DNA from: Leucoraja erinacea | Lineage: Eukaryota | DNA length: 64,000 nt | Direction: 5' to 3' | NCBI RefSeq assembly: GCF_028641065.1 | Contig: NC_073387.1 | Span: 26,164,001 to 26,228,000, forward strand | Part shown: positions 2,396 through 38,653 of the stretch, piece after piece | Numbering within the stretch: position 1 is the first letter of the stretch | Layout of the letters: every line of letters starts with the position of its first letter | Program-made: the position numbers and the translations under genes | Notes under the pieces: model-generated | What the model was told of the DNA's origin: nothing | Database searches by the model: none | The model's input: the letters and a program-made list of their open reading frames with translations, nothing else

Positions 2396-4104
2396 ACATG
2401 CTGTTGCATAGGATCCGTCCCTCAGTAGCCTGTGGTAGTACGATTCTGGGTTGCAGTCCTCTCCCTCAGAGTGCGGTGCCGTGACAACAACAACCAACCC
2501 CCTCGCTGGACCTTCTTGGTAAACAGTTACAGAGTCAGACATAGATAGGAAAGTCTCCTTAACGACCAAGAAGCCTTTTCTCAGTGAGTTTCACTTGTCC
2601 CAGACCCTTCAAAGCTTTTCTATCTATCCGCCTGTCCAAATGTATTTTAAATGTTGTTGTTAAAAGAAGGGAAGACAACTGTCTCATCCGCACCTCAGCC
2701 AACTCAAGTGTAAGCTGCGATTGGCGAAGGGGCAGAAGCTGTGCATCTGATCGGGCGGGCTTTTTTCAAGGGCAAGAAAGGACTGGTTGAGGTAAAAGAG
2801 GAAAGAATTAAAGGGATCTGGGGAACAATATGTTTTCCTCATCGGAGGCGGTGGGTACATGGAATGAAATGCTAGAGGAAGTGATAGAGGTGGGTACAAT
2901 TACAACTTTCAAAAGGTTTTTGGGTGTGTTCTCAGATTGGAAAGGTTTAGATGGATGTGGGCAAAATACAGTTTAACACAAGAGACTAGGTTGGATCGGC
3001 ACCTTGGTCAACAGGCGTGAATTAGACTGAGGGAGGGGGGGGGGGGCGTCTGTGCTGTGGAAATCTGTAAGATATGTGTATTAAATTAAAAAAAAAGATG
3101 TTATGCATAAAACACATAATACAGGTAATATGTTACATGAATACATAACTGTGTCATCAAATCAATATGTTAGCACTGAGATATGTTGACAACATATAAG
3201 GCTCCTGACAACGAACATTAAAGGCGCACATTTTATTTTCTGAATAACAATGACAAGATTTAATGTAGAAATTATATTTTACTCAACGTTTTTTAAAAAT
3301 TCAAATATTTATCAATCGAAGTATTTGATTACTCGACGTGTCTTTTTTACTCGAGATAGCTTTATAGATTGTGAGTTTTTTTTACTTGGGGAGTTTTTAC
3401 TCGAGGTGTGTTTTTTAGTCGAGGCGGGCTTTTTATTCGTTTTTTTTACTCGACGTATATTTTGTAACGGTGAGTTTTTTTTACTCGAGGTGTGATTTTT
3501 ACTTGGGGCGGGCTTTTTACTCGTTTTTATATACTCCAGATATATTTTGTAATTCGGTGGGATATTTACTCGAGGTGTGTTTTTTAACTCAAGCCAGAGT
3601 CGAGGTTAGTTTTTTACCCGTGGGATATTTTATTCGAGTTGCTTTTTTTTTTACACGAGTCGAGATGGGGTTTTTTTTACTTGAGGCGGGCTTTTAAACT
3701 CGTTTCTTTTGATCGATGTTTTTCTGCTTTTTTACTCGGTGTGATTTTTAGTTGAGGTGTGTTTTTAATCGAGGCGGGCTTTTTACTCCTGTTATTTTTT
3801 ATTAGAAGTATAATTTTAGTCGAGGCGGGCTTTTTACTCTTTTTCTTCCCGAGGTGTGTTTTTTATTTGAACTTTTTTTTAGTCGAGGTGGGCTTTTTAC
3901 TCGTGGTTTCCTTTTGCTCGAGGTATTTTAACTCGGTATGCTTTTAACGTGTGTTTTGTACTCGAGATGTATTTTTTTTAGTCAAGGCGGGCATTTTATT
4001 GATGGTTTCTTTTAACTTGAGATAGGGGTTGAACCCGAGCTGTGCTTTTTGCTCGTTTTTTTCACTCGTTAGTTGTTTTACTCAAGGTGTTTTTGTAACT
4101 GGGC

Positions 4105-4400
4105 GGTAGTTGTTTAGTCGGGGTGGGTGTTTAGGCGGGCTGGTTGTTTACTGGAGCAGGTTGTTTACATGGGGGGTTGTCCACTCGAGCTGTACTTGCG
4201 ACGCGCGCCGGCTTCGGACACTTTCTCCGCCACGGTTTCCCGCTCAAAAAACCGTCTTGCTAATTGGACGAAGTCCGAAGTCCGATCAGCGCTGGGGGCG
4301 GGTGCAGCGAGTGTTTAAAAGGCGGACGGGTCCGGCTCCCGCCTCCAGTCACGGAGCCGCTCGAGTGACGAAACATCGTGGTCGCCAGCTCCCATTGCCA
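4105..4400 (+). promoter_or_regulatory. Putative Pol II promoter cassette, copy 1 (most complete)
   Basis: TGTTTAC at 4145 and 4162 (forkhead consensus), TTTCCCGC 4236-4243 (E2F consensus), ATTGG 4263-4267 (inverted CCAAT), GGGGCGGG 4295-4302, TTTAAA 4314-4319, CpG-rich. Motif-based only; activity not shown. Confidence 0.45.
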
Positions 4401-5064
4401 GCACATGTACCTCGTTAGTTGTTTTTTCGTGGTATGGTTTATTTTTAACTCGATGTGCTTTTTATTCCAGTTACATTTTTTACTTTAGGCGGGCTTTTTA
4501 CGAGATATGTTTTTTTTTTAACACGGTAGGAATTTTATTCGAGGTGTGATTTTTAGTCGAGGCGGCTTTTTTACGTTATTTTTTCCCCCCCTCAAATGTG
4601 TTTTTTTTTGTCGAAGCCAGCTTTGTACTGGAGATGGGCGTTTGCTTCGTCGAGGCGGGCTTTTTACTCGTGCTTTTTTTAACCCACGGTTTAAAAAATA
4701 TTTTGCTATGTGTTTTGTAACTCGATGTACTTTTTATTCGAGGCTTGTTTCTCAGTAAGGTGGGAATTTGACTCGTTCTTTGTGACTCGGAGCGTCCGTT
4801 TTTTAACTCGAGGTGTGGTTTTTTTTACTAGAGGTGGGGTTTTTAATCTGTTTATTTTATCTCCTAGTATATTTTATCTCCTAATTATTTTACTCGGTAT
4901 GTTGTTTACCTCAAGGTGGGTTTTTTTAGTCGTGTTCGTGTTTTTTAGTCGAGGCGAGCTTTTTACTCGTGATTTCTATTTACTCGACATGCGTTTTTAA
5001 CTCGTATGTTTTTACTTGACCTGTACTTTCTCCTCAAGTTGGCTGTTTTACTCGAGGAGTTTTT

Positions 5065-5280
5065 GTAACTTGAGTCGGGTGGTTGTTTAGGCGGGGCAGG
5101 TTGCTTACTGGGAGCAGATTGTTTACTGGAGCAGATTGTTTACATGAGGGGTTGTCCACTGGTGCTGTACTTGTGGCGGGCGCGGGTTTCGCCGACAGCG
5201 GAAAGTTTCTCCGCTTCGATTTGTCGCTCAAAATCCCCCTCGTGTTCATTGGACGAAGCCCGAGGACCCTTCAGCGTTGG
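5065..5280 (+). promoter_or_regulatory. Promoter-like cassette, copy 2 (3'-truncated)
   Basis: Homologous to 4105-4290. Repeated tgtttac motifs and ATTGG near 5248. Confidence 0.35.
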
Positions 5281-6920
5281 TCACTCTTGTTTTTACTCGA
5301 GGTATATATTGTTTTAAACTCTATGTTCTTTTTACTCGAGCTCAGTCTTACTTTAGGCGGGCTTTTTACTCGTTTTTTTAAATCCAAGACATGTTTTTTT
5401 AACTCGGGTGTGATTTTTAGTCGAGGCTGACTTATAATTTTTAGTTGCAATCAGCATTTTATTGGAGATGGATGTTTATTTCGTCGAGGCGGGATTTTTA
5501 TAAGTGTTTTTTTAACTATCGGTATTTTATTTTATGTTTTTAGTCGAGGCGGACTTTTTTTTACTGGTGAGGACTTGAATCTGCGCTCCGTCAAAGCCGC
5601 GAGTCACCGTTTTACCCGAAGACGTTGGCGCGTCTACAAGCTTACCCCGCCTGGTCCAACCATTGCTCTTGAAAGTGCAGCTGAATGTAAGGTGCAGGAA
5701 TACACCTTTGATCCCGCAGGCAGGAGATAGTAATCATCTGAGACCGACTACCTAGGTGAGTCTGATAACACTTGGAGAATCGTGTTGTGTTGACGGGTGT
5801 TACGATGAATTCCTACACGATTAGGCGATGGATCGAATGTCTGATCAGTAGCTAAAAACTGTTTCTTTGCAATGGCTATGATGGTAATTTTGACAGAAGG
5901 ACAAGGAGCGTCACATAAAGCCAGCGAATATCCGATAATGAAGCCTCCTTGCCAGAGATGGGAACCCCCACCAGCGACTCAATATTGGCTAAAATAAAGT
6001 GAAAGGACTCAAATGGAAAGAAAAGACCCACCCAGGAAAAAAGCAAGAACAGTAAAACTGATGCAGCTTATCTCTGGGAAAAGTCGAGACATATGGAGAC
6101 AACATCAATGGGGAACCAGGTTGGACATCTTTCTTATTCATTGGTCTACTCGTTGGTGACTTGCTTTTACTCGATTTATGTTTTTAACTCTATGTGCATT
6201 TTACACGATATTTTTTTTAACTTGGGGCTGGCTTTTAACGGGTTTTTTTTACTCGTATTGTGATTTTTAGTCGGAGCCAGCTTTTTACTCGATATGGGTT
6301 TTTTGGTCAAGGCGAGCTTTTTACTCTTTTTAACTCGAGTTTGTTTTATTTAATTTTTACTCGGTGTAATTTTTACTCGGGGTGTTTTGTAACTCGATGT
6401 GTTTTTTGAAGTGTTTTATAACGAGGTGATTATTTACTCGAGGCAGGCTTTTTACTCGTAGTTTATTTTAGTCGGGGTGCTTTCTTTATAATTCGAGGTG
6501 GGGTTTTGAGTCGAGGCGAGCTTTTTACTCGACATGCGTTTTTAACTCGAGATGTGTTTTTACTCTTGCGGGTTTTTTTTACTTTTTTTGACGCGTTGGA
6601 TGTTTTACTCGTGGTGTGTGTAACTTTGGTCAGGGTGGTTGTTTTGTTCAGTCGGGGTGGTTTACTGGAGCAGTTTATTTACACGAGGGGGGCTTTTAAA
6701 ATGTGATTTTTAGTCTAAGCCAACTTTTTATTGCTCGAGTTGGTTTTTATTCGAGGTGATTTTGTAACTGTTTAGTCGCTATGGTTTAGCCTGGTGGAGG
6801 GGGGGGGGGGGTGTTTACATGAGGGGTCGATTCTCCACGTGCTGTTCATGTAGCGCAGCGGAAACTTTCTCCACTTCGGTTTCCCGCGCAAATCCTTTCT
6901 GATTATTGAACGAAACCGGA

Positions 6921-7048
6921 NNNNNNNNNNNNNNNNNNNNNNNNNNNNNNNNNNNNNNNNNNNNNNNNNNNNNNNNNNNNNNNNNNNNNNNNNNNNNNNN
7001 NNNNNNNNNNNNNNNNNNNNNNNNNNNNNNNNNNNNNNNNNNNNNNNN
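6921..7048. other. Assembly gap (128 N)
   Basis: N run; truncates another promoter-like copy (6770-6920). Confidence 1.
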
Positions 7049-7645
7049 CATTGGTTACTCTGGTTTTTAATCACAGTATGCTTTTTTTAAAAACGATGTG
7101 CTTTTTACTCCAGCAATTTTTTTATTATTTAACTTTAACTCTTAACTTTTTAACTCTGGCTTTTTACTCGTTTTATTTACTTGAGGTATATGTTTTTTTT
7201 TTATCTCGGTGGGATTTATTTCCTCGGATTGTATTTTTAAGTTAGGGCGGGCTTTTTACTTGTGAATTTTTCCAGCTTTTTATTGGTGATGGATGTTTGC
7301 TTAGTTGAGGTGGGCTTTTTACTCCTGCTCTTGTGTTTTTTAATTTGGTGTGATTTTTTTTTTTTTTCCTTCAAGGTGTTTTTTAGTCTGGGTGGACTTT
7401 TTACTGGTGAGGATGTGAATTTGTGCACAGTCCATGCTGTGAGCCACCGTTTTACCCGAAGGCATTGGCGCGTCTATATACTTAACCCACCTGGTCCAAC
7501 CATAGCTCTTGAAAGAGCCAGCGAAGGTAAGGTGCAGGAATAAGCCTATGAGCGCATTGGCAGGGGACAGTCCTTGCCTGAGGCTGACAAACAGGGTGAG
7601 TATGATAACACTTGGAGAATTGTGTTTGTGTTGATGGGTGTGTTA

Positions 7646-8700
7646 CAAGGGAACAGTTTAAAGGATCTGACTACTAGAATAGGAAAAAGGCTCACTCACA
7701 AATCAGATTTATTGGCAAGAGAGAATAAAAATATTTGTCTTGGTATGCGTGGGTCTGTTTTACAGCAGCACACCTCTCTGCCTCCATCTGTGGCCCTGAT
7801 CGCGACTCAGCCCATTGGTGAACACTTCATACATGAACTAACTTATGGCTTCCTGGCACCATCCTTTATACAGGTAAGAAATCAGCTGTTGAAAAAACCG
7901 CCAGTAAGTCCTGGCCAATAGAGCTTCTCCCACATTCAAACTATAACCAATGGCAGGGGACTGCATCCCAGCAAGCCCCGCCGCACCCTTCTTTGGGAAC
8001 AAAGCGCTATCAGCTGCAGAATTGCATGTAAAGCAATACACACAGCGCTAAAGACTTGGTGCGCAAATCAATACACGCAGAGCTACAGACTTGGCATACA
8101 AATCAATACATGCAGAGCTACAGACTTGGTGCGCAAATCAATTCACATAGCGCAAAAGACTTGGCATGCAAATCAATGCACAGAGCTACAGACTTGGTGC
8201 GCAAATCAATGCACAGAGCTACAGACTTGGTGCGCAAATCAATACACGCAGAGCTACAAACTTGGCGTACAAATCAATACATGCAGAGCTACAGACTTGG
8301 TGCGCAAATCAATTCTCATAGCGCAAAAGACTTGGCGCGCAGATCAATGCACAGAGCTACAGACTTGATGCGCAAATCAATGTACATAGAGCTACAGACT
8401 TGGTGCGTAAATCAATGCACAGAGCTACAGACTTGGTATACAAATCCATACACACAGCGCTAAAGACGGCACTCAAATCTATTCACCAGCGATGCAGACT
8501 TAGTGCGTAAAGGTAATACACGGTACTGCCAATTTGGTGTGCAAAAGTTTAAACAATGCTGTCGGCTTAATGCGCAGAAATTTAAACAAAGAGCTATCAG
8601 CTGCAGAACTTTGGTTCTAAATATAGTGTTACTGGCCACAGCACATTGGACTTTAAACACAACGCTATGGGTCAGTGACTGTTCAGGCAAAATTCTTGTA
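7646..8700. mobile_element. ~1.05-kb insertion (possible non-autonomous DNA transposon) with internal minisatellite
   Basis: Splits a module that is contiguous at ~5790-5830 and ~9160-9200. Ends tacaag-ggaacagt and actgttc...cttgta are partial inverted repeats. Confidence 0.5.
8030..8510. repeat. 33/37-bp minisatellite, about 13 units
   Basis: Tandem agagctacagacttggtgcgcaaatcaat(gcac/acacgc). Confidence 0.95.
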
Positions 8701-9664
8701 TAATGGTGTTATGGTGAATTCCTGAGCTAATAGGCGATGGATCAAATGTCTTCAGTAGCTAAAAGCTGCTTCTTTGCAATGGTTGATGGTAATTTTTTTA
8801 ACGTGTGAATTTTAGTCAAAGCCAGCTATTTATTGAAGATTGTTGTTTGCTTAGTTGAGGCATGCATTTTATTTGTGCTTTTTTAAACTTTTTTTACTCT
8901 TTGTCTCGAGGTGTTTTTTAGGCGAGGCGGACTTTTTACTGGTGAGGACACAAATCTGCGCACTATTCAGTCTGCGAGTCACCATCATACCCAAAGACAT
9001 TGGCGCGTCTACAAGCTTATCCCACCTGGTCCAACCGTAGGTCTTGAAAGAACCACCAAAGGTAAGGTGCAGGAATAAGCCTTTGAGCCCGTTGGCAGGA
9101 GATAGTGATCACCTGCGGCCGACTACCAGGGTGAGTATGATAACACTTAAAGAATCATGCTTGTGTTGATGAGTGTAATGATGAATTCCTGTGCTAATAA
9201 GCGATGAATCAAATGTCTGATCAGTTGCCAAAAACTGCCTTTTTGCAATGGCCCTGATGATAATTTTGACAGGAGGACGAGTGTCATATAAAACCAGAGA
9301 ATATCTGATAATGAAGTTTCTCCTTGCAGGGATAGGAACCCCCACCAGTGACTCAATACTGGCTAAAAGAAAGTGAAAGAGATACAAAATGGAAAGAAAA
9401 GATCCATCCAGGAAAAACAAAGAGCAAGAACATCAAAACTGATTATCTCCGGGAAAAGCCAAGAGATCACAGACCTCTGGAGATGGAGACAACATCAATG
9501 GGGAAATCTGGTTGGTCGCTCTTGATATTCTTTGGTTTACTTGTTTCTACTCATTGGTTACTTTTGTTTTTACTTGTTTTTTTTAACTTGTAGATTTTTA
9601 ACTTGGGATGGGTTTTTTAATTAAAGCTAGCTTTGTACTTATGGTTTATATTACTCTGTGCGTT

Positions 9665-9900
9665 TGTAATTGTTTAGTCGGGGTGGGTGGCTGGTTGTTT
9701 ACTGGAGCAGGTTGTTTACATGAGGGGTTGTCCACTCGTGCTGTACTTGCTGCGGGATTCGCCGACAGCAGAATCGTTCTCGGATTCGGTTTCCCGCTCA
9801 AAAATCCGTTCATACTAATTGGACGCAGCCCGAGGTCCGATCAGCGTAGGGTCCAGGTGCTGCTAGATTGACGGGCCGGGCTCCCGCCTCCAGTCATGGA
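9665..9900 (+). promoter_or_regulatory. Promoter-like cassette, further copy
   Basis: TGTTTAC 9696 and 9713, TTTCCCGC 9790-9797, ATTGG 9818-9822. Ends ccggg/ctcccgcctccagtca as in copy 1, but GC-box and TTTAAA are lost. Confidence 0.4.
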
Positions 9901-10560
9901 GCTACATGTCCACAGGGAGCTCCGCAGTTCCAAGATCGCTCTGACAGGAGTGCAGCGTTAGGTCGCATCGCTTCCCCACCTGGTGCTGTGACATCCAGTG
10001 CTTCCAGCAATCCAACAAATTGCTCCTTCCACTCCCACAAACAGGTGATCACTCTGGACAGAAGGATGGGCCAGAGCTTGGTTGTACTAGCACTTCCTGT
10101 AGGCCAATTCAATGGTGGTTTGGGCAGTATTTGTGACAGATCGGTCAGTGCATTAGTGAAGGCAGCAATTAGCTCCTTTGTCTTACAAAGGCAGAGAGTG
10201 AGATACTTGTTCTGACAAAACTCAATTGTATTGTAGGTAATACCGTGGATTTGAATGGAAAAGCCGCGCTGCCTGGAATCCCACGAGGTGCTCCTGAGGG
10301 AGGTCATCCAAGATCTATTTGAAGAATGAGCTTGGATGTCGTAGACTCACTGAAGGCCAGTGAGCTTAACTTGGCCGGGTTGTGGACGTGATCCTGCATG
10401 TGATCGTGCACGTGATCCGTCCACGGAGAGAATTTGTCCCCTGTCCGAGAAGATGAAGTACATCTATGACCTTCCGTCGTCCAGTACAACTAAAGGTCTG
10501 GTAAGAGCTGCTGAATATTTTACTCCCTTAGTCTGCTGTTTGCATTTATTGTGTCTGGAT

Positions 10561-11148
10561 CAGTGGTTCCCAACCTTTTTTTGGCCATGCCCCACCTAAT
10601 CACCTCTAAAATCCTGATGCCCCCGCCATGTGGTGATATATAATTCTTTTCATTTAAAAAGTGAACTCCGTTTCAGCTGAAGAAGCTTAAAACGCCAATA
10701 CCTTGGTTTAAACAAGCTTCAAAAGAACATGGCATCCATGAAAAACAAAAATGAAATAAACATAAGACAGTTAAAGTTCTGAGCAAGAAATTACTAAAAA
10801 ATTGTAAAAAAAAAGAAAAAAATGTTAGGTGGTATTAATATAATAATAATGATAAATATGATAATAAGAGTATTCACAGGTAATAAAGAGAGAGAAAATT
10901 CTGCGACGTGCATGAAGAGCGATGGCACGGTGATTATGTAATAACTACACAATAAACACCTTTTTTACCCAAAAATATTTACTCAAAATAACATCTGAAA
11001 CATAAACTACATATGTTTACCTGATGGAAAATCCTAAAAAATAAAAATCGAAAATTTGGACCCAGACCTCCTCAGTCGCGCTCAATTGCCCCCGTTACAA
11101 ATCAAATTGCCCCCCTGTGGGGTGTACGCCCCACGTTGGGAACCACTG
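10561..11148. mobile_element. hAT (Charlie-type) MITE
   Basis: TIRs cagtggttcccaac / gttgggaaccactg. 8-bp TSD gtctggat (10553-10560, 11149-11156). Empty site with a single gtctggat in the paralogous copy at ~19054. Confidence 0.95.
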
Positions 11149-11284
11149 GTCTGGATGTTCTATTGCTCTATTTGTAATGCTTAATTAAGAAACATGCAAG
11201 TGTAGTTCGGATGAAGATTTGATGTTCAGACTTGGTAGCATGTGTCATAATTTATTAGTAATGGAATTGTGACAACGTAAAGTG

Positions 11285-20925: not shown

Positions 20926-21299
20926 TTCGGTTCTGAAATCTGTTGCTGGTGCAATGTGGTTCAGGAAACTTGGTTGATGGGAAGATGTTGTTCTTGAACC
21001 TGGGAAGAACGATTGTCGGAGTGGTGAGTGTCTTTAAAGAGGCACCAGCGAGAGCTGCAATTAGCATTTTATTTTGTCTGGATGCCATTTTTCCATTTCC
21101 TTACATACGAACCCCGCAAGTGCAATTCAGACCAGTATTTAATCTTCAGGCTGGGTAGAAAGAGTCATAATTTATCTAGCTGCATTGCAAAGTGAGGTAT
21201 AGGCCTTTGATTGAATTGTTAAAGGGAGCGAGGTTGGCTGTCGAGGGGTGAGAAATGCTGACAATGCCATCCAATAGAGGACTTGGCGGCTGAGGACAG

Positions 21300-27200: not shown

Positions 27201-30200
27201 AATGGTAGTTACGACAAATGCAGAATGCAACACTTGAAAACCAAGGGATCTCTGGTAATGAAGCCTATCCTTGTCAGCGGACAGAACCCACACCCAAATC
27301 AACACTGGACAAAATGAGGAAGGAACATACCTGAGAGGAACAGGAGCATCATGACCGTACTATGAAATGTCTCTGGGAAAACCAAGGCATCACAACTGAC
27401 CTGAAGTAGCTGGAGCTAACGGCGATTGAGAACCATGCAGGTATCTTGGCAGTGTCATTGGATTCACCATCAGAGCAAAGCCAGAAGAAATATGTCAAAT
27501 AGCCTGACCAGCTCTGGAAGGACTCTGCTAGCAAGGCAGAATCTCCAGGAATGATGCATCTTTGGCTGAAGATGGAGCCATCACCAATTCAACACTGAAT
27601 AACATAAAGCACCAAGACGAGAAGGAAAAGAACCAGCCAGGACCAAACAGGAGTTCATGAGCATCATATCTGACACTGCTTGTTGGTGGGGAAACACAAG
27701 CGAGGATGTTAAAGGGAGCAAGGTGTGCCGTCCAAGAGAGGATCGGCAGCTGAAGACAGGCCTGCGGTGGGTTCCGGAGGTTGGACGAAGACTGGTTTCG
27801 GTGGGTGCCGGAGGTTGGGGAGAAGACGAAGAGGAACAAGTGCCAATGGTAGTAACGTCAAATGCAGAAAGCAACACCTGAAAGCCAAGGGATCTCTGGT
27901 AATGAAGCCTATCCTTGTCACAGAACCCATACTCAAGTCAACGTTGGATAAAGTGAGGAAGGAACATATAGGGGAGGAACAGGAGCTTCAGAACCCGACT
28001 ACAGATTGTCACTGGGAAAACCAAGGCATCACAATTCACCAGAAGTAGCTGGAGCTAACGACGATTGAGAACCAAGCAGGTATCTTTGCAGTTTCATTGG
28101 ATTCACCATCAGAAGATGGAGCCATCACCAATTCAACACTGAATAAAGGAAAGCACCAGTGATGACGAGAAGGAAAACACCCAGCCAGGACCAAACAGGA
28201 GTTCATGAGCATCATAACTGACACTGCTTGTTGGTTGGAAACACAAGCCAGGATGTTGAAGAGAGCAAGGTGTGCCATCCAAGGGAAGATTCAGCAGTTG
28301 AAGACGGGCCTGCGTTGGGTGTCAGAGAGAAGATGAAGTGGAACAAAAGGCAAAGAGTTACGCCAAATGACCTACTTTCGTCACCTAAGCAAGACGGTTA
28401 AAGAGTTGGGCCCTCAAGGAGCGAGGAAGATGGACGGAGCTGGGCCCTCTTTGGACGAAGATGGACCCTCGGTGGGTGCTGGAGGTCAGAGAGAAGATGA
28501 AGAGGAGCAAGTGCCAATGGTAGTAACGACAAATGCAGCACGTGACACCTGAAAGCCAAGGGATCTCTGGTAATGAAGTTTACCTTTGTCACAGTACAGA
28601 ACCCACATTGGATAAAATGAGGAAGGAACATACATGGGAGGAACAAGAGCATCAGAACCCTACTACGGATTGTCACTAGGAAAACCAAGACATTGCAATT
28701 CACCAGAAGTACCTGGAGATAACGATGATTGAGAACCGGTCTCCTCTTTGCAGCGTCATTGGATTCATCATCAGGGCAAAGCTGGAAGAAAGATGTGAAC
28801 TCGACTGACCAGCTCTGGGAGGACTCTGCTAGCAAGGCAGAATGTCCAGGAATGGTGCATCTATTTCCCTAAAGATGGAGCCATCACCAATTCAACACTG
28901 AAGAAAAGAAAACACCAGTGATGACGAGAAGGAAAGGATCCAGCCAGGACCAAACAGGAGTTCATGAGCAACATAACTGACACTGCTTGTTGGTGGGAAA
29001 CACAATCGAGGATGTTGAAGAGAGCAAGGTGTGCCATCCAAAGAGAAGATTCAGCAGCTGAAGACGTGCCTGCAGTGGGTGCCGGAGAGACGATGAAGAG
29101 GAACAATAGGCAAAGAGTTACGACAAATGACCTACTTTTGGCACCCAAGCAAGACAGTTAAAGAGCGAGTTGGGCCCTCAAGGAGCGAGGAATATGGACG
29201 GAGCCGTCCTAGTGAGGTGTCGGCAGCTGAAGATGGGCCCACGGTGGCTTCCTGAGGTTGGACAAAGATGGGCCCTTGGTGGGTGCTGGAGGTCGGAGAG
29301 AAGATGAAGAGGAACAAGTGCCAATGGCAGTTACGACAAATACAGAATGCGACACCTGAAAGCCAAGGGATCTCTGGTAATGAAGCCTATACTTGTCAGC
29401 GGACAGAACCCACACCCAAATCAACACTGGACAAAATGAGGAAGGAACATACAGGAGAGGAACAGGAGCATCATAACCCTACTATAAATTGTCTCTGGGA
29501 AAACCAAGGCATCACAACTGACCTGAAGTAGCTGGAGCTAACGACGATTGAGAACCATGCAGGTATCTTTGCAGTGTCATTGGATTCACCATCAGAGCAA
29601 AGCCACAAGAAATATGTCAAATAACCTGACCAGCTCTGGAAGGACTCTGCTAGCAAGGCAGAGTCTCCAGGAATGATGCATCATTGCCTGAAGATGGAGC
29701 CATCACCAATTCAACACTGAAGAAGTGAAAGCACCAGTGATGACAAGGAGGAAAAGATCAAGCCAGGACCAAACAGATCATGAGCATCATAACTGACACT
29801 GCTCGTATGTGGGAAACACAAGCGAGGATGTTAAAGAGAGCAAGGTGTGCTGTCGAAGAGAAGACTCGGCAACTGAAGATGGGCCCTCGGGTGCCGGACG
29901 TTGGACGAAGACGGGCCCACGATGGGTATCCGGAGAGAAGAAGAAGAAGACGAGGAGCAAGTGGTAAAGTGTTATGGCAAATGACCTACTTTCGTCACCC
30001 AAGCAAGATGGTTAAGGAGCCAGTAAGATGGATGGTGCCGTCCAAGTGAGGACTTGGCAGCTGAATACGGGCCCGCGATGGGTTCTGGAATTTGGATGAA
30101 GATGAGCCCTTGGTGGGTGCCGGAGGTCATGGAGAAGATGAAGAGCAGCAAGTGCCAATGGTAGTTACGCCAAATGCAGAAAGCAACACCTGAAAGGCAA

Positions 30201-33200
30201 GGAATCTCTGGAAATGAAGCCTATCACAGAACCCACACTCGTCAACACTGGATAAAACGAGGAAGGATCATATAGGGGAGGAACATGAACTTCAGAACAC
30301 TACTACGGATTGTCACTGGGAAAACCAAGGCATCACAATTCACCAGAAGTAGCTGGAGCTAAAGACAATTGAGAACTGGTTTTCTCTTTGCAGCGTCATT
30401 GGATTCATCATCAGGGTAAAGCCAGAAGAATGATGTCAAATCGACTGACCAGCTCTGGGAGGACTCTGCTAGCAAGGCAGATTCTCCAGAAATGGTGCAT
30501 CTATTTCCCTAAAGACGGAGCCATCAGCAATTCAACACATCACTGGAGGGAAAGCGCCAGTGATGACGAGAAGGAAAAGATCCAGCCAGGACCAAACAGG
30601 AGTTCATGGGCATCATAACTGACACTGCTTGTTGGTTGGATACACAAGTGAGGATGTTAAAGAGAGCAAGGTGTGCCGTCCAAGAGAGGATTCGGCAGCT
30701 GAAGATGGGCCCGCGGTGTGAGCCAGAGGTTGGTCGAAGACGGGCCCTCGGTGGGTGCCGGAGGTCGGAGAGAAGACGAAGAGCAGCAAGTGCCAATGGT
30801 AGTTATGACAAATGCAGAACGTGACACCTGAAAATCAAGAGATCTCTGGTGATGAAGCCAAACCTTGTCACAGGACAGAACCCACACCCAAATCAACACT
30901 GACCAAAATGAGGAAGGAACCTGCAGGAGAGGAAGAGGAGCATCAGAACCCTACTATGGATTGTCTCTGGGGAAAACCCAAGTCATCACAACTGACCAGA
31001 AGTAGCTGGAGATAACGACGATTGAGAACCGATCTCTTTGCAGTGTCTTTGGATTCACCATCAGGGCAAAGCCAGAAGAAATATGTCAAATAGCCTGTCA
31101 AGCTATGGGAGAACTCTGCTAGCAAGGCAGAATCTCCAGGAATTATGCATCTTTGCCTGAAGATGGAGCCATCACCAATTCAACACTGAACAAAAGAAGC
31201 ACCAGTGATGGCGAGAAGGAAAGGATCCAGCCAGGACCAAACAGTAGTTCATGAGCATCATAACTGACTCTGCTTGTTGGTGGGAAACACAAGCGAGGAT
31301 GTTGAAGAGAGCAAAGTGAGCCATCCAAGATAAGATTCAGCAGCTGAAGACGAGCCTGCAGTGGGTTCCGGAGAGAAGATGAAGAGGAACAAGAGGCAAA
31401 GAGTTACGACAAGTGACCTACTTTCGGTACCCAAGCAAGACGGTTAAAGAGAGAGTTGGGCCCTCAAGGAGCGAGGAATATGGACGGAGCCGTCCAAGTG
31501 AGATCTCGGCAGTTGAAGATGGGCCCACGGTGGGTTCCAGAGGTTGGACAAAGACGGGCCCTCAGTTTGTGCCGGAGGTCGGAGAGAAGACGAAGAGGAG
31601 CAAGTGCCAATGGTAGTTACGACAAATGCAAAACGCGACACATAAAAGCCAATGGATCGCTGGCAAGGAAGCCTATCCTTGTCAGCGGACAGAACCAACA
31701 CCCAAGTCAACACTGGAGGAAGGAACATGCAATGGAGGAACAGGAGCATCAGAACCCTACCACGGATTGTCACTGGGAAAACCAAGGCATCACAACTGAC
31801 CAAAGGTCTGATGGGCCCCGTGGTGGGTGCCGGAGGGAAGAAGAAGAGCAAGTGGCGAAGATAATTATGACAAATGACCCCACCTTCGTCACCCAAGCTA
31901 GACGGTTAAAGAGGGGGAGCTGGGCCCTCGAGGAGCAAGGAAGAAGGACGGAGCTGTCCAAGAGAGGACTCGGCAGCTTCGGGAGGTTGGACGAAGACAG
32001 GCCCTCGGTGGGTGTTGGAGAGAAGATGAAGAGGAGCTACCGTCAATTGGGAACCAAACTGGACTCCTCTTTGCAGTTTCATTGGATTCACCATCAGGTC
32101 AAAGCCAGAAGAAAGATGGTCAGAGCCTGACCAGCTCTGGGAGGACTCGGCTAGCAAGGCAGAATCTCCAGGAATGAGGCATCTTTTTCCCTGAAGATGG
32201 AGCCATTACCAATTCAACCCGGAAGAAGTCAAAGCACCAGTGATGACAAGGAGGAAAAGATCCAGCCACGACCAAACGGGAGATCATGAGCATCATAACT
32301 GCCGCTGGTTGTTGGTGGGAAGCACATGTGAGGATGTTAAAGAGTGTGTGTCGTCCAAGAGGATATGGCAACTGAAGACAGGCCCGCGGTGGGCGCCGGA
32401 GGTTGGATGAAGACGGACCCTCGGTGGCTGCCAGAGAGAAGACGAAGAGGAGCAAGTGCCAATGGTAGTTACAACAAATGCAGAACGCGATACGTGAAAG
32501 CCAAGGGATCTCTGGTAATGAAGCCTATCTTTGTGACAGGACAGAACCAACACCCAAGTCAACACTGGACAAAATGAAGAAGGAACATGCAGGGGAGGAT
32601 CAGGAGCATCAGAACCCTACCACAAATTGTCTCTGGGTAAACCACGGCATCACAACTGACCCAAAGTAGCTGGAGCTACCGATTATTGAGAACTAAGCTG
32701 GTCTCTTTGCAGTGTCATTGGCAAAGCCAGAAGAAAGATGTCAAATAGCCTGACCAGCTCTGGAACGACTCTGCTAGCAAGGCAGAATCTCCAGGAATGT
32801 TGCATGTTTTTGACTGAAGATGGAGTCTTCACCAATTCAACACTGATCAAAAGAAAACACATGGTAAGCAATAACAAATAAAGAAAAATAATTTAGTTAG
32901 TATCTTGGCATATATTGGAGTTAATATTCATTACAGCAATCTGATGGATATCTTGTCTCAAACATTATGTTGCTACTAGTTATAGGGAAGTAGACCATGA
33001 TAATACAAATAAACAATCTTTGTGTGGCAGTCTGTTGTGGTTTAGAAATAATGTTTTGCTGGTGCAATGTGGTTCAAGAACTTAATGGGAAGATGCTGTT
33101 CTTGAACCTTGAAAGACCAGTTCTTGGGCTGCTGAGATTCTTTTGAGGCACCAAAAGTGCTGCAATTTGCATTTATTTAGTCTGGATGTCTTATTACTTT

Positions 33201-35410
33201 ATTTGCTTACATATGTAGCCTTCAAGTGGAGTTCAGACCAGCATTTCACCTTCAGGCTGGTTAGAATGTTTTTGGTATTTTGCCACAATACAAAGTGAGG
33301 AATAGGCTGAGCCTGCTTGATCATTCATCAATAGATAATCGTAGATTATGACCATGATAACTTGCAGGCTTGTTCTTGTGTGATGTGAACATAACATGTT
33401 GTATTGGTTAATCCATATTATGATTGTGGATGGATACAATATCTCTCCAATAGCTATAATCTGTTTCTTTACCATAGCTCTAATGATAAATCTGGCAGAA
33501 GGTTTTTAGAAGTTTATAATAGTTTGTCTGAGGAACCAGTGACGTGGAACGTAACAGATCCCCTGAAGAAACTTTTTCTAAACAGCCCCTGTTTTCAACC
33601 CAATAACCTCTCCTCGATGCAGCACTTGCAAGAAAACAGTCGCTCGAGTGTTATTATTACAGGATGTCCAAATTACCAGGTGATGGAAGTGAAGCCCTAC
33701 TTCACACACCTTGCAATACCAAATCAAGCCACCTCGGGTTGCCAGAAGGAATGTGCAGAAAGCCACACCTGAAAGCCCAGGAGTCTGGGAATGAAGCCTC
33801 TACTTGCCAGAGGACACCAAGTCAACACGGATCAAAATTAGGAGGAAAAGGCCCAGCCATGAACATACAGGAGGGCAGGAGCAATAGAACCCTGACACTT
33901 CTCTTCTACAAGGTGTCCATGCTGAGAGTCACTGTCTTGTCTGAGGAGATCCGGTGCATCTGTAACCCTCTCTCGCCCAGTCCAACGTAAGGTGTGTACA
34001 AAGCTACCGAAAAGAGCTTAATATTTTATTCCTGACAAACAGGGTATTTTAAGAGCCTCTGAGAAGAGATGTAATATTTCACTCCCATAGTCTGTCATGT
34101 GGATGTCCTGTTTCTCTATTTGTAGTGCTTAGTTGAGAATCATGCACGGCGTTCAGACCAGTATTTGAATTGTGGATCATGCCATTATTTATTAGTAATG
34201 GTATTGTGACAATGTACGGTGCTGGAATAGGCATTTGAACCTTTGTCAATAGGTGGCAAAAAATGTTAATGATAAAAGGATGATGACCTTAAGACTACAA
34301 TAATCTTGGAGTTTGGTTCTTGTTTGATACGAACATAACTTGGCTGTTGTCGTGACTGATCATGCTACAGGTAAGGGATGGATGCAGATTGGCAGTGTCT
34401 TTCCAATTGCTGTAATCCGCTTCTTTGTAGTGTCATTGGATTCATCATCAGGGAAAGCCAGAAGAAAGATGTCAACTCGACTGACCAGCTCTGGGAGGAC
34501 TCTGCTAGCAAGGCAGAATCTCCAGGAATGGTGCATCTATTTCCCTAAAGATGGAGCCATCACCAATTCAACACTGAACAAAAAAAGCACCAGTGATGAC
34601 GAGAAGGAAAGGATCCAGCCAGGACCAAACAGGAGTTCATGAGCAACATAACTGATACTGCTTGTTGGTGGGAAGCACAATCGAGGATGTTGAAGAGAGC
34701 AAGGTGTGCCGTCCAAGAGAAGATTCAGCAACTGAAGACGTGCCTGCGGTGGGTTCCGGAGAGAAGATGAAGAGGAGCAAGAGGCAAAGTGTTATGACAA
34801 ATAACCTACTTTCGTGACCCAAGCAAGGGTTAAGGAGCGAGGAAGACGGATGGTGCCGTCCAAGTGAGGACTTGGCAGCTGAAGATGGGCCTGCGATGGG
34901 TGCCGGAGGTCAGGGAGAAGATGAAGAGGAGCAAGTGCCAATGGTAGTTACGTCCAATGTAGAAAGTAACACCTGAACGCCAAGGGATCTCTGGTAATGA
35001 AGCCTATCCTTGTCACAGAACCCACACCCAAATCAACACTGCACAAAATGAGGAAGGAACATGCAGGAGAGGAACTGGAGCATCAGAACCCTACCATGCA
35101 ATGTCTCTGGGAAAACCAAGGCATCACAATTGACCAGAAGTAGCTGGAGTTAACGACGATTGAGAACCAAGCTTGTCCTCTTTGCAGTGTCATTAGATTC
35201 ACCATTAGGGCAAAGCCAGAAGAAAGATGTCAAATAGCCTGACCAGCTATGTAAGAACTCTGCTAGCAAGGCAGAATCTCCAGGAATGATGCATCTTTGC
35301 CTGAAGATGGAGCCATCACCAATTCAACACTGAACAAATGAAAGCACCAGTGATGACGAGAAGTAAAACACCCAGCCAGGACCAAACAGGAGTTCATGAG
35401 CATCATAACC
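21300..35410. repeat. Complex tandem array, about 17 units of ~620-830 bp with higher-order repeats
   Basis: Landmark ctctgctagcaaggcaga, or a close variant, recurs near 21681, 22328, 23553, 24174, 25284, 26704, 27523, 28824, 29645, 30464, 31114, 32146, 32770, 34500 and 35258. Two further units (22845, 28115) carry the same internal deletion. Confidence 0.95.
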
Positions 35411-36564
35411 GACAATGGCTGGGCTAGTAAATCTGGCAGAACAATAGGTTTGTAATAGTTTGAAAAACTAGAGTGATTGGGACCCATTTAGAAAGTCCTC
35501 TAAATTGCCACTGACTTGAAGCCTCTAACGTTTACCAGTTCCAGCACTTGCAAGATAACACATCCTTATGTTAATTTCAATTTATCACATGGAAATGCCT
35601 TGAAGCAAGATGTCAAATGGACAGACATGCTGTGCTGGGAGAACTCTGCTAGCAAGACAGAAAATCTTTGGTAATGAAGCTTCTACTTGCCAGAGGCTGG
35701 ATCTCCCACCAAGTCAACACTGGTCAAGGGAAAGGAAAAGGGATGACAAGGAGGACGGCAGGGCCCAGCCACGAACGTGGACGGGAGCAAAAGAAGCATC
35801 ACCCTGACACCGCTTGTCGTCGGGAAAGCCAAGGCGTCAGAACAGGCCATAAAGTTGCTGGAAATAATGTCAGTGGAGAACCAGCCCGATCTCTGCTGTG
35901 CAATACCATTGGATGCACCACAAGGGAATGGCCAGAGAGAGGCAAGATGTCAGGTGTCCTGATGGACTCCAGCAGGACTCTGCAAGCAAGACGGAGAAAT
36001 GCTGAGGTTCACAGAAAGAAAAGAAGCATGATGAAGAACAGCAATCATTTATTGATAAAACAATGTGTGTGGGCCACTCATTTGTATGAACTGAATGACC
36101 CTGCGTGGGAGAACCGCTGAGAACTTGGGGGGACCACAAATGGAATGTGTTAAATGGTTTGTGTAAAATGGAATACATGTAACTTTGGCGGCACCATTTA
36201 TGTGGTGACTCTTTGCATACCTTGGGTCTGAAGAATATCAGTGACTTGTCACATGTGACAAAGTATCATTCATTCAAGTATCTGGAAATATTGGCAATAG
36301 AGAGCTAGGGTGGTCTCTGTGCAATAGCATTGGATGCTTTACTCTGCTAGTAAGACAGAATTGCTTGGTATCTGATTTTTCTATTTGTAGTACTTAGTTA
36401 CAAAGCACGGGAGTGTTATATAGATGTGGAGTTGTTCCTCAGACTGGGGAGGACATTAGTAATGCGTTTGTGACAATGTACGGTGCAGCAGCAATATGCC
36501 TTTGAGACTGCTTGATCAAGCATTTAAAGGTGGTAGAAGTTGGTGATGATCATAACTCTTGAAG

Positions 36565-36958
36565 GTAGACATAAAAAGGTGGAGTAACTCAGCGGGTCAG
36601 ACAGCATCTCTGAAGAAAAGGTCCAATGTTTCAGGTCTAACCCTTCTTCAGACTGGAGAGTCGGGAAAGGGAAACAAGAGATATAGATGGTGATGTAGAA
36701 AATCCCATTAACTCATTCTCACCTAACAAACTGCTTTCTTTATAATTATAACTTTTTTGCATGCCTTTCATTAATTTGTTCTGTATCTCCACATCACCGT
36801 CTATATCTCATTTCACATTCCGCTGACTCCAGTCTGAAGAACAGTCTCGACCCTAAACGCCATCTATTCCTTTTCTCCAGAGATGCAGTCTGACACAAAG
36901 TTGCTCCAGCTTTTTGTGCCTATCTTCTATTTAAACCAGCATCTGTAGTTCCTACATG
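36565..36958. mobile_element. Fold-back Penelope-derived element
   Basis: Inverted arms (...cccttcttcagactggag...gagatatagatggtgatgt / acatcaccgtctatatctc...ctccagtctgaagaa...) inserted into a private module. Confidence 0.75.
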
Positions 36959-37257
36959 TAAAGGCTTGTTCTTGTGTGATGCTGTTGTAGCGATGGATCC
37001 ATACATTGTTTTGGGATGGATGGATGCCTCTTCAGTAGCTATAACCTGCATCTTTTAAATGGCTCGGGTGTTAAATTTATCAGGAGTATGAGATGTTTGT
37101 AATGGTTTGACTGAAGAACTGGAGTGATGGAGAAACTGATGGATCCCTTGAAGAAAGTTCAACAAACCTACCCATGGTTTGAAGCCAATAATGTCTCCTA
37201 GCTGTAGCATATGCAGTATAACTGATCCATGTATGTTAACTTAAACATAATATATGT

Positions 37258-37555
37258 CCGTGGTTTGTCACCTTGTCGTGGTGGAGAAGATTGTGTGATC
37301 CTGAGAACGATGTCGTATGGAGCTATGCTCCTGGTAGGGCCACCCATGGCGGTAAGGTCGTGGAGGAGGTCCCTGAGCACCCAGAGTAATCCAACCAAGT
37401 CCTTAAAAGTGGAACGGGCGGAGGATGATGGCTGACTTTAGTGGAGCGTCACAGCGGCTGGGAAGGCGGATGAAGGCTGCAGCAGAAAAGGGTCCCCAGT
37501 CGTCTCGGACTCCATGCTCCTGAATCCTGACTCAGATCTGTCAAGGACCGATGCA
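37258..37555 (+). mobile_element. RTE-clade (Rex3/Expander-like) LINE 5' region
   Basis: ccttgtcgtggtggag...gagctatgctcctggtagggccacccatggc resembles RTE 5'UTRs (recalled similarity, not searched). Confidence 0.55.
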
Positions 37556-37729
37556 TAAGTCTCCCTACGTCCCTCTGCAGTGTTGCAAAGAAATCCTGCA
37601 AAAAAAAAGTAAACCAAATGACATTGTCGTCATATTTCTCAAACATCGCGAGGTAATCTGACATTTGGTAGCAACAAACCTGCTGTCGACATCTGCTATC
37701 TCCAGATCTCAGCCAACTGCTGCCTGAAC

Positions 37730-38026
37730 CAAGTGCGGAACGGTAGAGTTGCTGCCTTACAGCACAAGAGACCCGGGTGCGATCCTGACTACGGGTGCTC
37801 TCTATGGAATTTTTTTGTTCTCCCCTTGACCTGCGTCGGTTTTCTCTGAGATCTTCGGTTAACTCCCACACTCAAGGTGTACAGGTTTGTATGTTAATTG
37901 GGAATGGTCAAAATTATAAATTGCTCCTACTGTACGTGATAGTGTTAATGTGCGGGGATCGCTGTACGGTATAGACGCGGTGAGCCAAAGGGCCGGTTTT
38001 TGCACTGTATCTCTAAACTAAACTAA
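37730..38026 (+). mobile_element. tRNA-derived V-SINE (HE1-like)
   Basis: A/B-box-like head (cggtagagttgctgccttacagc...ccgggtgcgatcctg), central gttctcccc..gacctgcgt..gtttt core, (taaac)n tail. Confidence 0.8.
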
Positions 38027-38653
38027 TTCACTGACTTTCTTGTGCCCTTGCCCCTGTCTCTGGCTCCGATTACACCAACGGATATGGAGGACATCCACTC
38101 TCAGCAACCTTCCCCCCTCATCCCCCCTCCTATGCTGTCTTGGGCAAGCAGAGGCCACCAGTTGTCTATGTAAGTGTTAACATTTACATTCAAAAATAGA
38201 TTTTCGATTAAAAAATATGTTTAATTTAGATGCCTTTACTGTTGATTTTGTTTTTTCTGTATGAAAGATTGATGGGCCCATGCTCTCAGATCTTGTCCAT
38301 CGTGGACCTTCTGTGGACCAATGAGCCTAACCTGGCCAATCTGCGCACTGACAGTTGCCTTCTTGCCCGAAGAGATCCAGAGCATTTCCAATGTTCCCTC
38401 GCCATTCCAACAAAGCCTCTGGTAAGAGCTACCAAAAAGAGTATTTTATTCCTCACTGACAGTCTTTTTAAAAATTACCAGAAAAAAACATACTCCCCAA
38501 GTCTGCCATTTACATGTATTTTGTCTTGATATCCTATTTCTCTATTTGTAGTGCTTCGTAACAAAAGATGCAAAGTTTGGGCTGAAAATTGAGCCTCAGG
38601 CTGGGTAGAAAGTTTCACACAACTTAACACAACATGGTTTATGTGAAACAATT

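What the first reader, a model, noticed from the sequence alone, without database searches (positions are those of the whole stretch)
3290..38653. 35-kb mosaic locus built from a few private, reshuffled modules with their own promoter cassette
Seen: apart from ordinary TEs, nearly everything here belongs to a small module set. The segment at 5930-6150 and 9300-9550 (ataatgaag..tccttgc...cccacc...tcaa.actgg...gggaaaa.ccaag) is a diverged homologue of the array unit and of 35660-36000. The module gtctggatg...ctctatttgtagtgctta recurs at ~11150, 12015, 19055, 21075, 26300, 33180, 34100, 36370 and 38520. All copies are co-oriented and lie downstream of promoter-like cassettes, and divergence ranges from very high to very low, implying long-lasting in-situ amplification. 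Inference: a single-strand non-coding transcription unit (piRNA-cluster or small-RNA-host type), or an amplified relic of an unidentified viral or transposon genome. I do not recognise it as a named family.
Basis: partly seen in the sequence, partly recalled or inferred. Interest (0 to 1): 0.8.

Follow-up and report, generated by a model that had tools for sequence, protein, structure and literature searches.

The report
Old tandem-duplication complex with nested macrosatellite
This 35-kb stretch of little-skate DNA next to the TIM immune-receptor genes is a non-coding block that grew by repeated head-to-tail duplication of one roughly 2-kb unit, one part of which expanded into a 14-kb repeat array; it is real but ordinary, and I found no sign that it is a small-RNA cluster or a virus relic.

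Summary
About 68% of 3290-38653 consists of direct repeats found, within this window, only inside the locus, and all lie on the + strand. The 190-bp module M sits at all nine named places. The segments at 5.9, 9.3 and 35.6 kb are true diverged homologues of the array unit U.

Profile searches reduce all modules to one ancestral unit of about 2-2.5 kb. Its order is: T-rich CpG-keeping minisatellite, promoter-like cassette B, exon-like piece with a splice-donor motif, M, X, U. The unit was copied in tandem about 15 times. U was then amplified into a 14.2-kb array of about 16 unit equivalents, which grew further by 2-8 kb internal duplications. Tandem duplication alone explains the co-orientation.

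- "Private" fails for U. Genomic DNA contigs give 30-340 copy equivalents, against 2-8 expected from the window.
- B cassettes occur only at 4.1-12.4 kb, not upstream of every module copy.
- The modules show no coding capacity, no Pfam or Rfam match and no conserved RNA fold in M.
- Only the inserted LINE, SINE and MITE copies carry transposon hallmarks.
- Two poly(A) RNA runs give almost no reads. The few reads on U that cover checked variant sites carry letters of other copies.

Germline and small RNA were not tested. Verdict: a new member of a known kind (macrosatellite or segmental tandem duplication), of low to moderate interest.

The parts
3290..7250 (+). T-rich 17-18 bp minisatellite field (core TTTTTACTCGAGG) that keeps its CpGs, interrupted by B cassettes and module C1
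   Evidence: Tandem Repeats Finder rows. 52 matches with up to 2 mismatches on the + strand, 50 of them at 3344-7174, against 1 on the - strand. CpG observed/expected is 0.83-1.84 in every 400-bp bin of 3201-7200, against 0.46 for the whole window. The core CG is kept in 46 units and decayed to TG or CA in 14.
4102..4359 (+). B cassette copy 1, the best preserved. It carries two GTTGTTTAC motifs 17 nt apart, TTTCCCGC followed by TCAAA, ATTGG (reverse CCAAT), GGGGCGGG and TTTAAAAGG. Further copies lie at 5079-5285, 6762-6920 (cut by the gap), 9662-9904 and 12295-12385 (partial).
   Evidence: nhmmer B profile, E 1e-24 to 9e-78, all on the + strand. Motif searches. Sequence read. Promoter function is inferred from motifs only and was not tested.
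5557..6143 (+). Module C1 (exon-like piece with GGTAAGG and GGTGAGT donor-like motifs, then C-mid, which equals X) followed by the diverged U homologue 5881-6143. Paralogues: C2 at 7396-7641, and C3 at 8931-9256 with U' at 9290-9536.
   Evidence: Alignment A2. nhmmer C, X and U profiles. Invariant columns cluster mildly (P 0.005-0.03).
6921..7048 (.). Assembly gap inside a B cassette and T-rich junction
   Evidence: Run of N. The flanks are colinear with 4903-5263 and 5277-5477. Not filled.
8030..8467 (+). Separate 35-bp minisatellite (12.7 copies; higher-order periods 171 and 206)
   Evidence: Tandem Repeats Finder.
9528..12154 (+). Long unit, copy 1: T-rich, B, E (ends in an exon-like piece with a GGTAAGAG donor motif), M (type a, 11136-11318), F, M (type b, 11997-12186). 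A 588-bp MITE sits at 10561-11148.
   Evidence: Self-BLAST gives 85-91% identity to copy 2. MITE: terminal inverted repeat CAGTGGTTCCCAAC and 8-bp target duplication GTCTGGAT. The MITE is absent from the paralogue, whose matching blocks 18704-19061 and 19053-19307 abut.
12153..21208 (+). Long unit, copy 2. It is split by a nest of LINE and SINE fragments at 12661-18703 and by a further insertion at about 19308-20303. M copies lie at 19036-19229 and 21057-21227.
   Evidence: Self-BLAST. Pfam RVT_1 and Exo_endo_phos on nest ORFs. The nest matches TE copies elsewhere in the window in both orientations.
21218..35419 (+). U macrosatellite. The unit is about 650-750 bp and irregular. The array holds about 15.6 unit equivalents, is 59.5% purine on the + strand, and contains 2-8 kb internal duplications (offsets of about 2.1, 5.3, 6.9 and 7.8 kb).
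   Evidence: k-mer distance spectrum. BLAST and nhmmer register maps. Coverage and composition. Stop codons shared by most copies in all six frames.
25463..26625 (+). Non-U insert a, made of older unit parts: partial M, X (25548-25957), U' (25957-26097), exon-like piece (26117-26234), M (26283-26476), start of X. The array then resumes.
   Evidence: 90% identical to 33265-34422. Module profiles.
32861..34422 (+). Non-U insert b: end of F (33004-33153), M type b (33162-33351), X (33350-33753), U' (33754-33893), exon-like piece (33914-34032), M type a (34080-34273), start of X. The array then resumes.
   Evidence: DNA depth is 126-311, about 3-7 copy equivalents. RNA depth is 0-0.4.
35412..38653 (+). 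Degenerate 3' units: X (35412-35585), U' (35580-35995, single copy), M (36344-36542, single copy), high-copy TE (36556-36953), X (36957-37250), high-copy TEs (37260 to about 38030), exon-like piece plus M (38291-38649). The stretch ends at gap 38654-38753.
   Evidence: Module profiles. DNA depths are 42-95 over U' and M, and up to 2.7 million over 36524-38091. Sequence read. The right flank of the gap has no module homology.

Best explanation
The locus is an old, locally grown tandem-duplication complex. One ancestral non-coding unit of about 2-2.5 kb was duplicated head to tail many times, presumably by unequal crossing-over or replication slippage. Its order was: T-rich CpG-rich minisatellite, promoter-like cassette B, exon-like piece with a splice-donor motif, M, X, U.

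The copies then diverged, lost different parts and collected LINE, SINE and MITE insertions. One sub-part, U, was amplified secondarily into a macrosatellite of about 16 units, which grew further by multi-unit duplications. U belongs to a satellite family with on the order of 100-300 copies per haploid genome. This window is therefore not its only home, or else the assembly has collapsed part of it.

Shown: the anatomy, the co-orientation, the lack of coding capacity, the copy-number excess and the near absence of poly(A) RNA.

Inferred: the duplication mechanism; that most of the block is methylated and neutral (CpG observed/expected mostly 0.2-0.6); that the ancestral unit was the 5' part of a spliced gene or lncRNA with a CpG-island-type promoter; and that the leftmost 4 kb, with CpG observed/expected near or above 1, stays unmethylated in the germline.
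For: - All in-locus repeats are direct, and 68% of the locus is made of them.
- Cross-homologies collapse the modules into one unit. C matches the exon-like end of E (E 3e-6). X matches C-mid (E 3e-14 and 4e-12). X or the start of X lies between M and U at 26496, 34297, 35412 and 36935. U' follows C-mid or X in five units.
- M falls into two subtypes that keep their relative order.
- Duplicated blocks range from 59-75% identity (old copies) through 85-91% (the 2-kb long unit) to 90-94% (blocks inside the array).
- TE insertions are copy-specific. The MITE with its target duplication is absent from the paralogue.
- No coding or RNA-family signal was found.
- Extra U copies in DNA contigs show 'goes back' joints, which indicate tandem arrangement.
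- RNA is near zero.
Against: - Conserved blocks in C (CATTGGCGCGTCTA, GGTAAGGTGCAGGAATA and others) cluster more than column shuffles predict (P 0.005-0.03).
- The 3.2-7.2 kb part has kept its CpGs despite 20-35% divergence between minisatellite copies.
- Both points hint at some past or present constraint or germline hypomethylation, so the block may not be wholly inert.
- RNA was sampled only from two poly(A)-based runs (3-5% of each) and only over 32.8-38.65 kb. The B and C region was never laid with reads.
- Where the extra U copies lie is unknown.
Confidence: 0.7

Rival explanations
1. A germline unistrand non-coding transcription unit, such as a piRNA-precursor or lncRNA cluster. It would be driven from the CpG-rich B and C promoter cassettes at the left end and read through the co-oriented modules and the array.
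For: - All modules are on one strand.
- B carries CCAAT, E2F-like, GC-box and TATA-like motifs.
- The 3.2-7.2 kb part keeps CpG observed/expected near or above 1, as unmethylated promoters do.
- Donor-like and acceptor-like motifs are conserved between copies.
- Single-cell RNA reads on U lie almost only on the + strand.
Against: - Poly(A) RNA depth is 0-0.4 over 32.8-34.4 kb and 35.5-36.1 kb.
- At the variant sites listed, nearly all U reads carry the letters of other copies (for example 14 of 14 and 10 of 10 at 35130).
- The + strand bias may be an oligo-dT priming effect on the A-rich strand.
- B cassettes are absent from the right two-thirds of the locus.
- CpG is depleted across the array.
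- M has no conserved RNA structure.
Confidence: 0.1
2. An amplified relic of a mobile element. Candidates are a non-autonomous Helitron-type or composite element that captured a promoter and exon fragments and carries an internal satellite, or a viral genome.
For: - U-like sequence is far more abundant in the genome than this window explains.
- TE-derived satellites are common (my own knowledge).
Against: - No transposase, reverse transcriptase or viral domain lies outside the obvious LINE insertions.
- No terminal inverted or long terminal repeats bound the units in the 3.0-12.7 kb part that was scanned. The only clear terminal repeat belongs to the MITE.
- M at 36344 and U' at 35.5-36.1 kb are single copy in genomic DNA.
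- Module order is conserved as in tandem copies, and no module copy occurs in the other 29 kb of the window or on the - strand.
Confidence: 0.12
3. A decayed tandem family of a once functional spliced gene (promoter, exon 1, intron, exon 2), so that the units are pseudogenes rather than random DNA.
For: - Promoter-like B is followed by exon-like pieces that end in GGTAAG or GGTGAGT motifs. These are kept in 3 of 3 C copies and 3 of 5 E-end copies.
- An acceptor-like TTTTGACAG motif sits in front of U' in 2 of 2 copies.
- Invariant blocks cluster mildly.
Against: - No ORF is conserved between copies. The ATG in E1 and E2 is absent from the three other exon-like copies.
- U has stop codons shared by most copies in all frames.
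- There are no Pfam or protein word-search hits.
- Short splice-like motifs are weak evidence on their own.
Confidence: 0.25

Closest known systems
Vertebrate macrosatellites with kilobase units (human D4Z4, DXZ4, CT47, RS447 and similar; PMC3018141, PMC5687341)
   Same: Head-to-tail arrays of units from about 1 kb to a few kb, all in one orientation. The units can carry their own promoter-like CpG-rich segment, arise locally by unequal exchange and may be non-coding (DXZ4).
   Different: Here the array is old and heterogeneous: units are 78-94% alike, not near-identical. It is irregular in unit length and CpG-poor across the array. It also sits beside a visible series of its own diverged precursor units. 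CTCF binding, chromatin state and copy-number polymorphism were not testable.
Satellite DNA with higher-order repeat structure (for example alpha-satellite higher-order repeats)
   Same: Monomers are organised into larger duplicated blocks (offsets of about 2.1, 5.3, 6.9 and 7.8 kb). The family has on the order of hundreds of copies in the genome.
   Different: The monomer is long (650-750 bp). The array in this window is small (14 kb), lies in a gene-bearing region between immune-receptor genes, and its blocks are 6-10% diverged rather than homogenised.
Tandem small-RNA host clusters (SNORD116/115, C19MC) and unistrand piRNA clusters
   Same: Repeated units contain exon-like pieces and a conserved intronic module, all on one strand.
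   Different: M has no snoRNA or miRNA features, no conserved fold and no covariation. There is no Rfam match and virtually no RNA in the runs sampled.

Membership tests
Macrosatellite / locus-level tandem duplication | Head-to-tail copies of a unit of about 1 kb or more, all in one orientation | tested here: met
   U units of 650-750 bp and a long unit of about 2 kb. All hits are on the + strand.
Macrosatellite / locus-level tandem duplication | Units are not bounded by transposon termini or target-site duplications | tested here: met
   In the 3.0-12.7 kb part that was scanned, only the inserted MITE shows a terminal inverted repeat and a target duplication.
Macrosatellite / locus-level tandem duplication | Confined to one or a few loci; copy number variable between individuals | tested here: inconclusive
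   DNA depth shows many more U copies than the window holds.
piRNA cluster (unistrand) | Long single-strand precursor transcript in germ cells | tested here: inconclusive
   Near-zero coverage in one oligo-dT bulk run and one single-cell run over 32.8-38.65 kb. The tissues are unknown, and no gonad or total-RNA run was laid.
piRNA cluster (unistrand) | Abundant 26-31 nt small RNAs with 5' U mapping to the locus | not testable with these tools
   No small-RNA run was offered.
Small-RNA host gene (snoRNA or miRNA in repeated introns) | Conserved structured RNA inside each unit | tested here: not met
   RNAalifold consensus energy is -1.35 kcal/mol, and 0 of 7 pairs are compensatory. z-scores run from -2.15 to +0.73. 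There are no Rfam hits.
Transposon or viral relic | Remnants of element proteins, or element termini, in the modules | tested here: not met
   No Pfam domain in module ORFs. Stop codons shared by most U copies in all frames. RT and endonuclease domains occur only in the inserted LINE nest. No terminal repeats.
Transposon or viral relic | Dispersed copies across the genome | tested here: inconclusive
   U is multi-copy, but M at 36344 and U' at 35.5-36.1 kb are single copy. No whole-genome search was available.
CpG-island promoter (B cassette and T-rich field) | CpG not depleted relative to the genome background | tested here: met
   Observed/expected is 0.83-1.84 in every 400-bp bin of 3201-7200 and 0.84 at 9601-10000, against 0.46 for the window.
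CpG-island promoter (B cassette and T-rich field) | Transcription start, open chromatin or lack of methylation shown by data | not tested

The most novel reading that the evidence does not exclude
The locus preserves the birth of a satellite family. It would show a graded series from a single gene-like unit, with an unmethylated and possibly still active CpG-rich promoter field at 3.2-7.2 kb, through diverged tandem copies, to the amplified U array that has since spread or expanded to hundreds of copies. That promoter field might drive a germline-specific unistrand non-coding transcript (a piRNA or lncRNA precursor) across the block.
Probability: 0.1. Interest if true: 0.6.

Novelty: new member of a known kind. 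Interest (0 to 1): 0.25.

Why it matters
As it stands, the result mainly serves annotation. The block between the CHUK-like remnant and the next TIM gene is a non-coding tandem-duplication complex, not a gene cluster, a virus or a small-RNA locus. Both assembly gaps lie in repeated sequence, and the second probably hides more copies.

Two features give it modest wider value. First, it shows in one place the steps from a single unit to a macrosatellite. Second, it contains a 4-kb AT-rich stretch that has kept its CpGs, which would be an unusual candidate for a non-methylated island in a cartilaginous fish. If germline data showed that this field is an active promoter feeding a unistrand transcript, the locus would become a useful model for how repeat arrays and their transcription arise.

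Tried and rejected
- Coding origin. Pfam on ten ORFs from the locus and its surroundings gave nothing, apart from a V-set domain in the TIM exon at 60 kb. A protein word search with the longest array ORF (224 aa) gave no hit at E <= 0.001. Stop-codon mapping on 17 aligned U copies found 5-10 stops shared by most copies in every frame.\n- RNA families. Rfam at gathering score over the whole window and at E <= 1 over 3-39 kb gave only chance-level rows. No tRNA-like genes were found.\n- Structured small RNA in M. This was rejected.\n- TE termini around the units. None were found in the 3.0-12.7 kb part that was scanned.\n- Earlier notes of the scan. Searches by sequence and by words found no other window with this array. 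The operators say a blank here means nothing.\n- Literature. They sit 17 nt apart and resemble two units of the 17-18 bp minisatellite, so they may be a by-product of it.\n- I considered reading the X-like piece at 36957-37250 as a high-copy TE. Depth at site 37077 is only about 98, so the high depth comes from the flanking TE insertions.
Full report
**Context.** Earlier notes of this scan place the window in the little skate genome. A TIM receptor cluster and a truncated CHUK-like gene lie just upstream. I found a TIM-type V-set exon at 60068-60676 on the + strand (Pfam V-set, E 2.8e-15). The finding therefore lies between immune-receptor genes. The window has two runs of N, at 6921-7048 and 38654-38753. 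I did not fill them or look up their letters.

- An alignment of the nine named places shows one module, M, of about 190 bp.
- A profile of M finds 11 hits, all on the + strand and all between 11.1 and 38.65 kb. Core identities run from 54 to 97%. Two subtypes exist: type a at 11136, 19036, 26283, 34080, 36344 and 38505, and type b at 11997, 21057 and 33162.
- A profile built from nine array units finds the array at 21218-35419.
- Of the 35,236 read bases of the locus, 23,804 are + strand repeats found only inside the locus. Another 4,427 match sequence outside the locus or in inverted orientation, which marks them as TE-like. The remaining 7,005 are unassigned.
- Part of the unassigned remainder is LINE coding remnants (RVT_1 and Exo_endo_phos) and a 588-bp MITE with terminal inverted repeat CAGTGGTTCCCAAC and target duplication GTCTGGAT.

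**Anatomy.** The array has a base unit of about 650-750 bp, but it is irregular. Units are truncated and rearranged. A k-mer distance spectrum shows extra periods near 2.1, 5.3, 6.9 and 7.8 kb. These periods correspond to multi-unit duplications:
- 21900-23814 matches 27084-29087 at about 94%.
- 24509-25463 matches 31347-32326 at 90%.
- 25463-27678 matches 33265-35417 at 90%.
- 26625-27842 matches 28745-29963 at 91%.

The array holds about 15.6 unit equivalents and is 59.5% purine on the + strand.

Left of the array, a long unit of about 2 kb (9528-12154) is duplicated in tandem as 12153-21208 at 85-91% identity. The second copy is split by the LINE and SINE nest at 12661-18703 and by a second insertion. 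Further left lie three copies of module C (5557, 7396, 8931), five copies of cassette B (4102, 5079, 6762, 9662, 12295) and a T-rich 17-18 bp minisatellite field.

**One ancestral unit.** Profile searches tie the modules together.
- The first part of C is homologous to the exon-like end of E that precedes M (33914-34011, E 3e-6; also 18883-19017 and 38338-38436).
- The middle of C is homologous to X (5796-5900, E 3e-14; 9141-9276, E 4e-12).
- X, or its start, lies between M and U at 26496, 34297, 35412 and 36935.
- U' follows C-mid or X at 5881, 9290, 25957, 33754 and 35580.

The two 'inserts' in the array (25463-26625 and 32861-34422) are therefore older unit parts (M, X, U', exon-like piece, M) caught inside the amplified U. 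The whole locus then reads as about 15 diverged, variously deleted copies of one unit. Its order is: T-rich minisatellite, B, exon-like piece, M, X, U. U was secondarily amplified.

No module profile hits the other 29 kb of the window or the - strand. No terminal repeats bound the units in the 3.0-12.7 kb part that was scanned. This is the signature of tandem duplication in place, and it explains the co-orientation without invoking transcription.

**The gaps.**
- Gap 6921-7048. The left flank (6601-6920) aligns to 4903-5263 and the right flank (7051-7298) to 5277-5477 of the neighbouring paralogous copy. The two sides are colinear and nearly adjacent in that paralogue. Continuity of module order is plausible, but the true length is unknown. 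Reading frame is irrelevant here.
- Gap 38654-38753. The left flank is an exon-like piece plus M, which in two paralogues is followed by U. The right flank has no module homology. The locus therefore ends inside the gap.

**Not coding, and not a known RNA.**
- No module ORF has a Pfam domain.
- The longest array ORF has no protein relative in the word search.
- Across 17 aligned U copies, every frame has 5-10 stops shared by most copies. U was therefore already non-coding when it amplified.
- Rfam gives nothing at gathering scores and only chance-level rows at E <= 1.
- M has no conserved fold: the consensus energy is -1.35 kcal/mol, none of 7 pairs is compensatory, and single-copy z-scores run from -2.15 to +0.73.

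In the contigs of two DNA-type runs, single-copy parts have summed depth of about 42-95, so I take about 45 as one copy. Those single-copy parts include U' at 35.5-36.1 kb and M at 36344.

| Region | Summed depth | Copy equivalents |
|---|---|---|
| Insert and M region, 32.8-34.4 kb | 126-311 | 3-7 |
| 38.1-38.65 kb | 266-343 | 6-7.6 |
| U part, 34.4-35.5 kb | 1,384-15,204 | 30-340 |
| 36524-38091 | up to 2.7 million | dispersed TEs |

A simulation that cuts the window itself into 60-150 nt pieces and applies the same 90% rule predicts only 2-8 copies over U and 1-2 over the insert. U is therefore not private to what is assembled here. Joints of the 'goes back' kind (for example 35410 to 34845) show that the extra copies are also tandem. 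The tool warns that summed contig depth is not a copy number, so these figures are orders of magnitude only.

A second organism label (run X3) shows the same depth pattern. Its listed unique pieces are mostly near-identical (1-3 other letters in 180-440 nt), alongside some more diverged pieces.

**RNA.** I laid an oligo-dT bulk run (about 5% read) and a single-cell run (about 3% read).
- Depth is 0-0.4 over the insert and M region and 0-0.4 over 35.5-36.1 kb.
- Depth is 1-16 over U.
- At the variant sites listed, nearly all RNA reads carry the letter of the majority of genomic copies, not this copy's letter. At 35130 this holds for 14 of 14 and 10 of 10 reads.
- The single-cell reads on U lie almost only on the + strand. 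Oligo-dT priming on the A-rich strand could produce that bias.

There is thus no support for transcription of this copy. Gonad, total-RNA and small-RNA data were not available.

**Promoter-like cassette and CpG.** B carries two GTTGTTTAC motifs 17 nt apart in three copies (7 matches against 0.48 expected). TTTCCCGC followed by TCAAA or GCAAA occurs in three copies. The best copy also has a reverse CCAAT, GGGGCGGG and TTTAAAAGG. The paired GTTGTTTAC motifs have the spacing and shape of the 17-18 bp minisatellite unit, so they may be a by-product of it.

B occurs only at 4.1-12.4 kb, so the claim that all module copies lie downstream of such cassettes holds only for the left third of the locus.

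More striking is the CpG pattern. Observed/expected CpG is 0.83-1.84 in every 400-bp bin of 3201-7200, against 0.46 for the window, mostly 0.2-0.6 in the array and 0.1-0.4 in the TE nest. Among minisatellite units, the core CG is intact 46 times and decayed to TG or CA 14 times, although the units are only 65-90% alike. By inference, this 4-kb AT-rich field has escaped germline methylation or is under some constraint.

Invariant columns in the three C copies also cluster mildly (P 0.005-0.03). These are the only hints that part of the block is not inert.

**Comparison with known kinds.** The closest kinds are vertebrate macrosatellites and satellites with higher-order structure (PMC3018141, PMC5687341). 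Shared features are kilobase units, one orientation and local origin, with a possible promoter in the unit and a non-coding character in some cases.

This locus differs in being old and heterogeneous (78-94% identity between units). It also lies beside a visible series of its own diverged precursor units.

It fails the tested defining features of small-RNA host clusters and of TE or viral relics. The piRNA features could not be tested.

**Verdict.** The locus is a new member of a known kind and of low to moderate interest. The CpG-keeping field, and the question of where the other U copies lie, are the points worth a follow-up.

Noticed in passing
window 3201-7200: A 4-kb AT-rich stretch (GC 0.33-0.55) has CpG observed/expected of 0.83-1.84. 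It is built from a 17-18 bp minisatellite whose TCGA core keeps its CG in most units. It is a candidate non-methylated island of unusual composition.
   Followed up: partly
window 60068-60676 (+): An ORF contains a TIM-type immunoglobulin V-set domain (Pfam E 2.8e-15), and 61676-62125 has a Ser/Thr/Pro-rich ORF. This looks like another TIM-family gene downstream of the repeat block.
   Followed up: partly
window 38654-38753 and 38092-38650: The second assembly gap follows directly after an exon-like piece plus M unit. DNA depth just before it is 6-7.6 times single copy, and the DNA contigs carry other letters than the reference at 38360-38388. More copies of this unit are probably unassembled.
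   Followed up: partly
window 10561-11148: A 588-bp MITE with terminal inverted repeat CAGTGGTTCCCAAC and 8-bp target duplication GTCTGGAT (hAT-like by target size) is inserted into one M copy and absent from its paralogue.
   Followed up: yes
window 8030-8467: A separate 35-bp minisatellite has 12.7 copies and higher-order periods of 171 and 206 bp. It is unrelated to the other modules.
   Followed up: no
window 36524-38091: Very high-copy dispersed elements reach a DNA contig depth of 2.7 million and have abundant RNA reads on both strands. They include a hairpin-forming element at 36556-36953 and a truncated element starting at about 37742 that I take to be a SINE. I recognised both by eye from memory and did not test the assignments against a database.
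   Followed up: partly
I saw no kinase-like ORF in 1-3400. Whether the CpG-rich field once served that gene is open.
   Followed up: no
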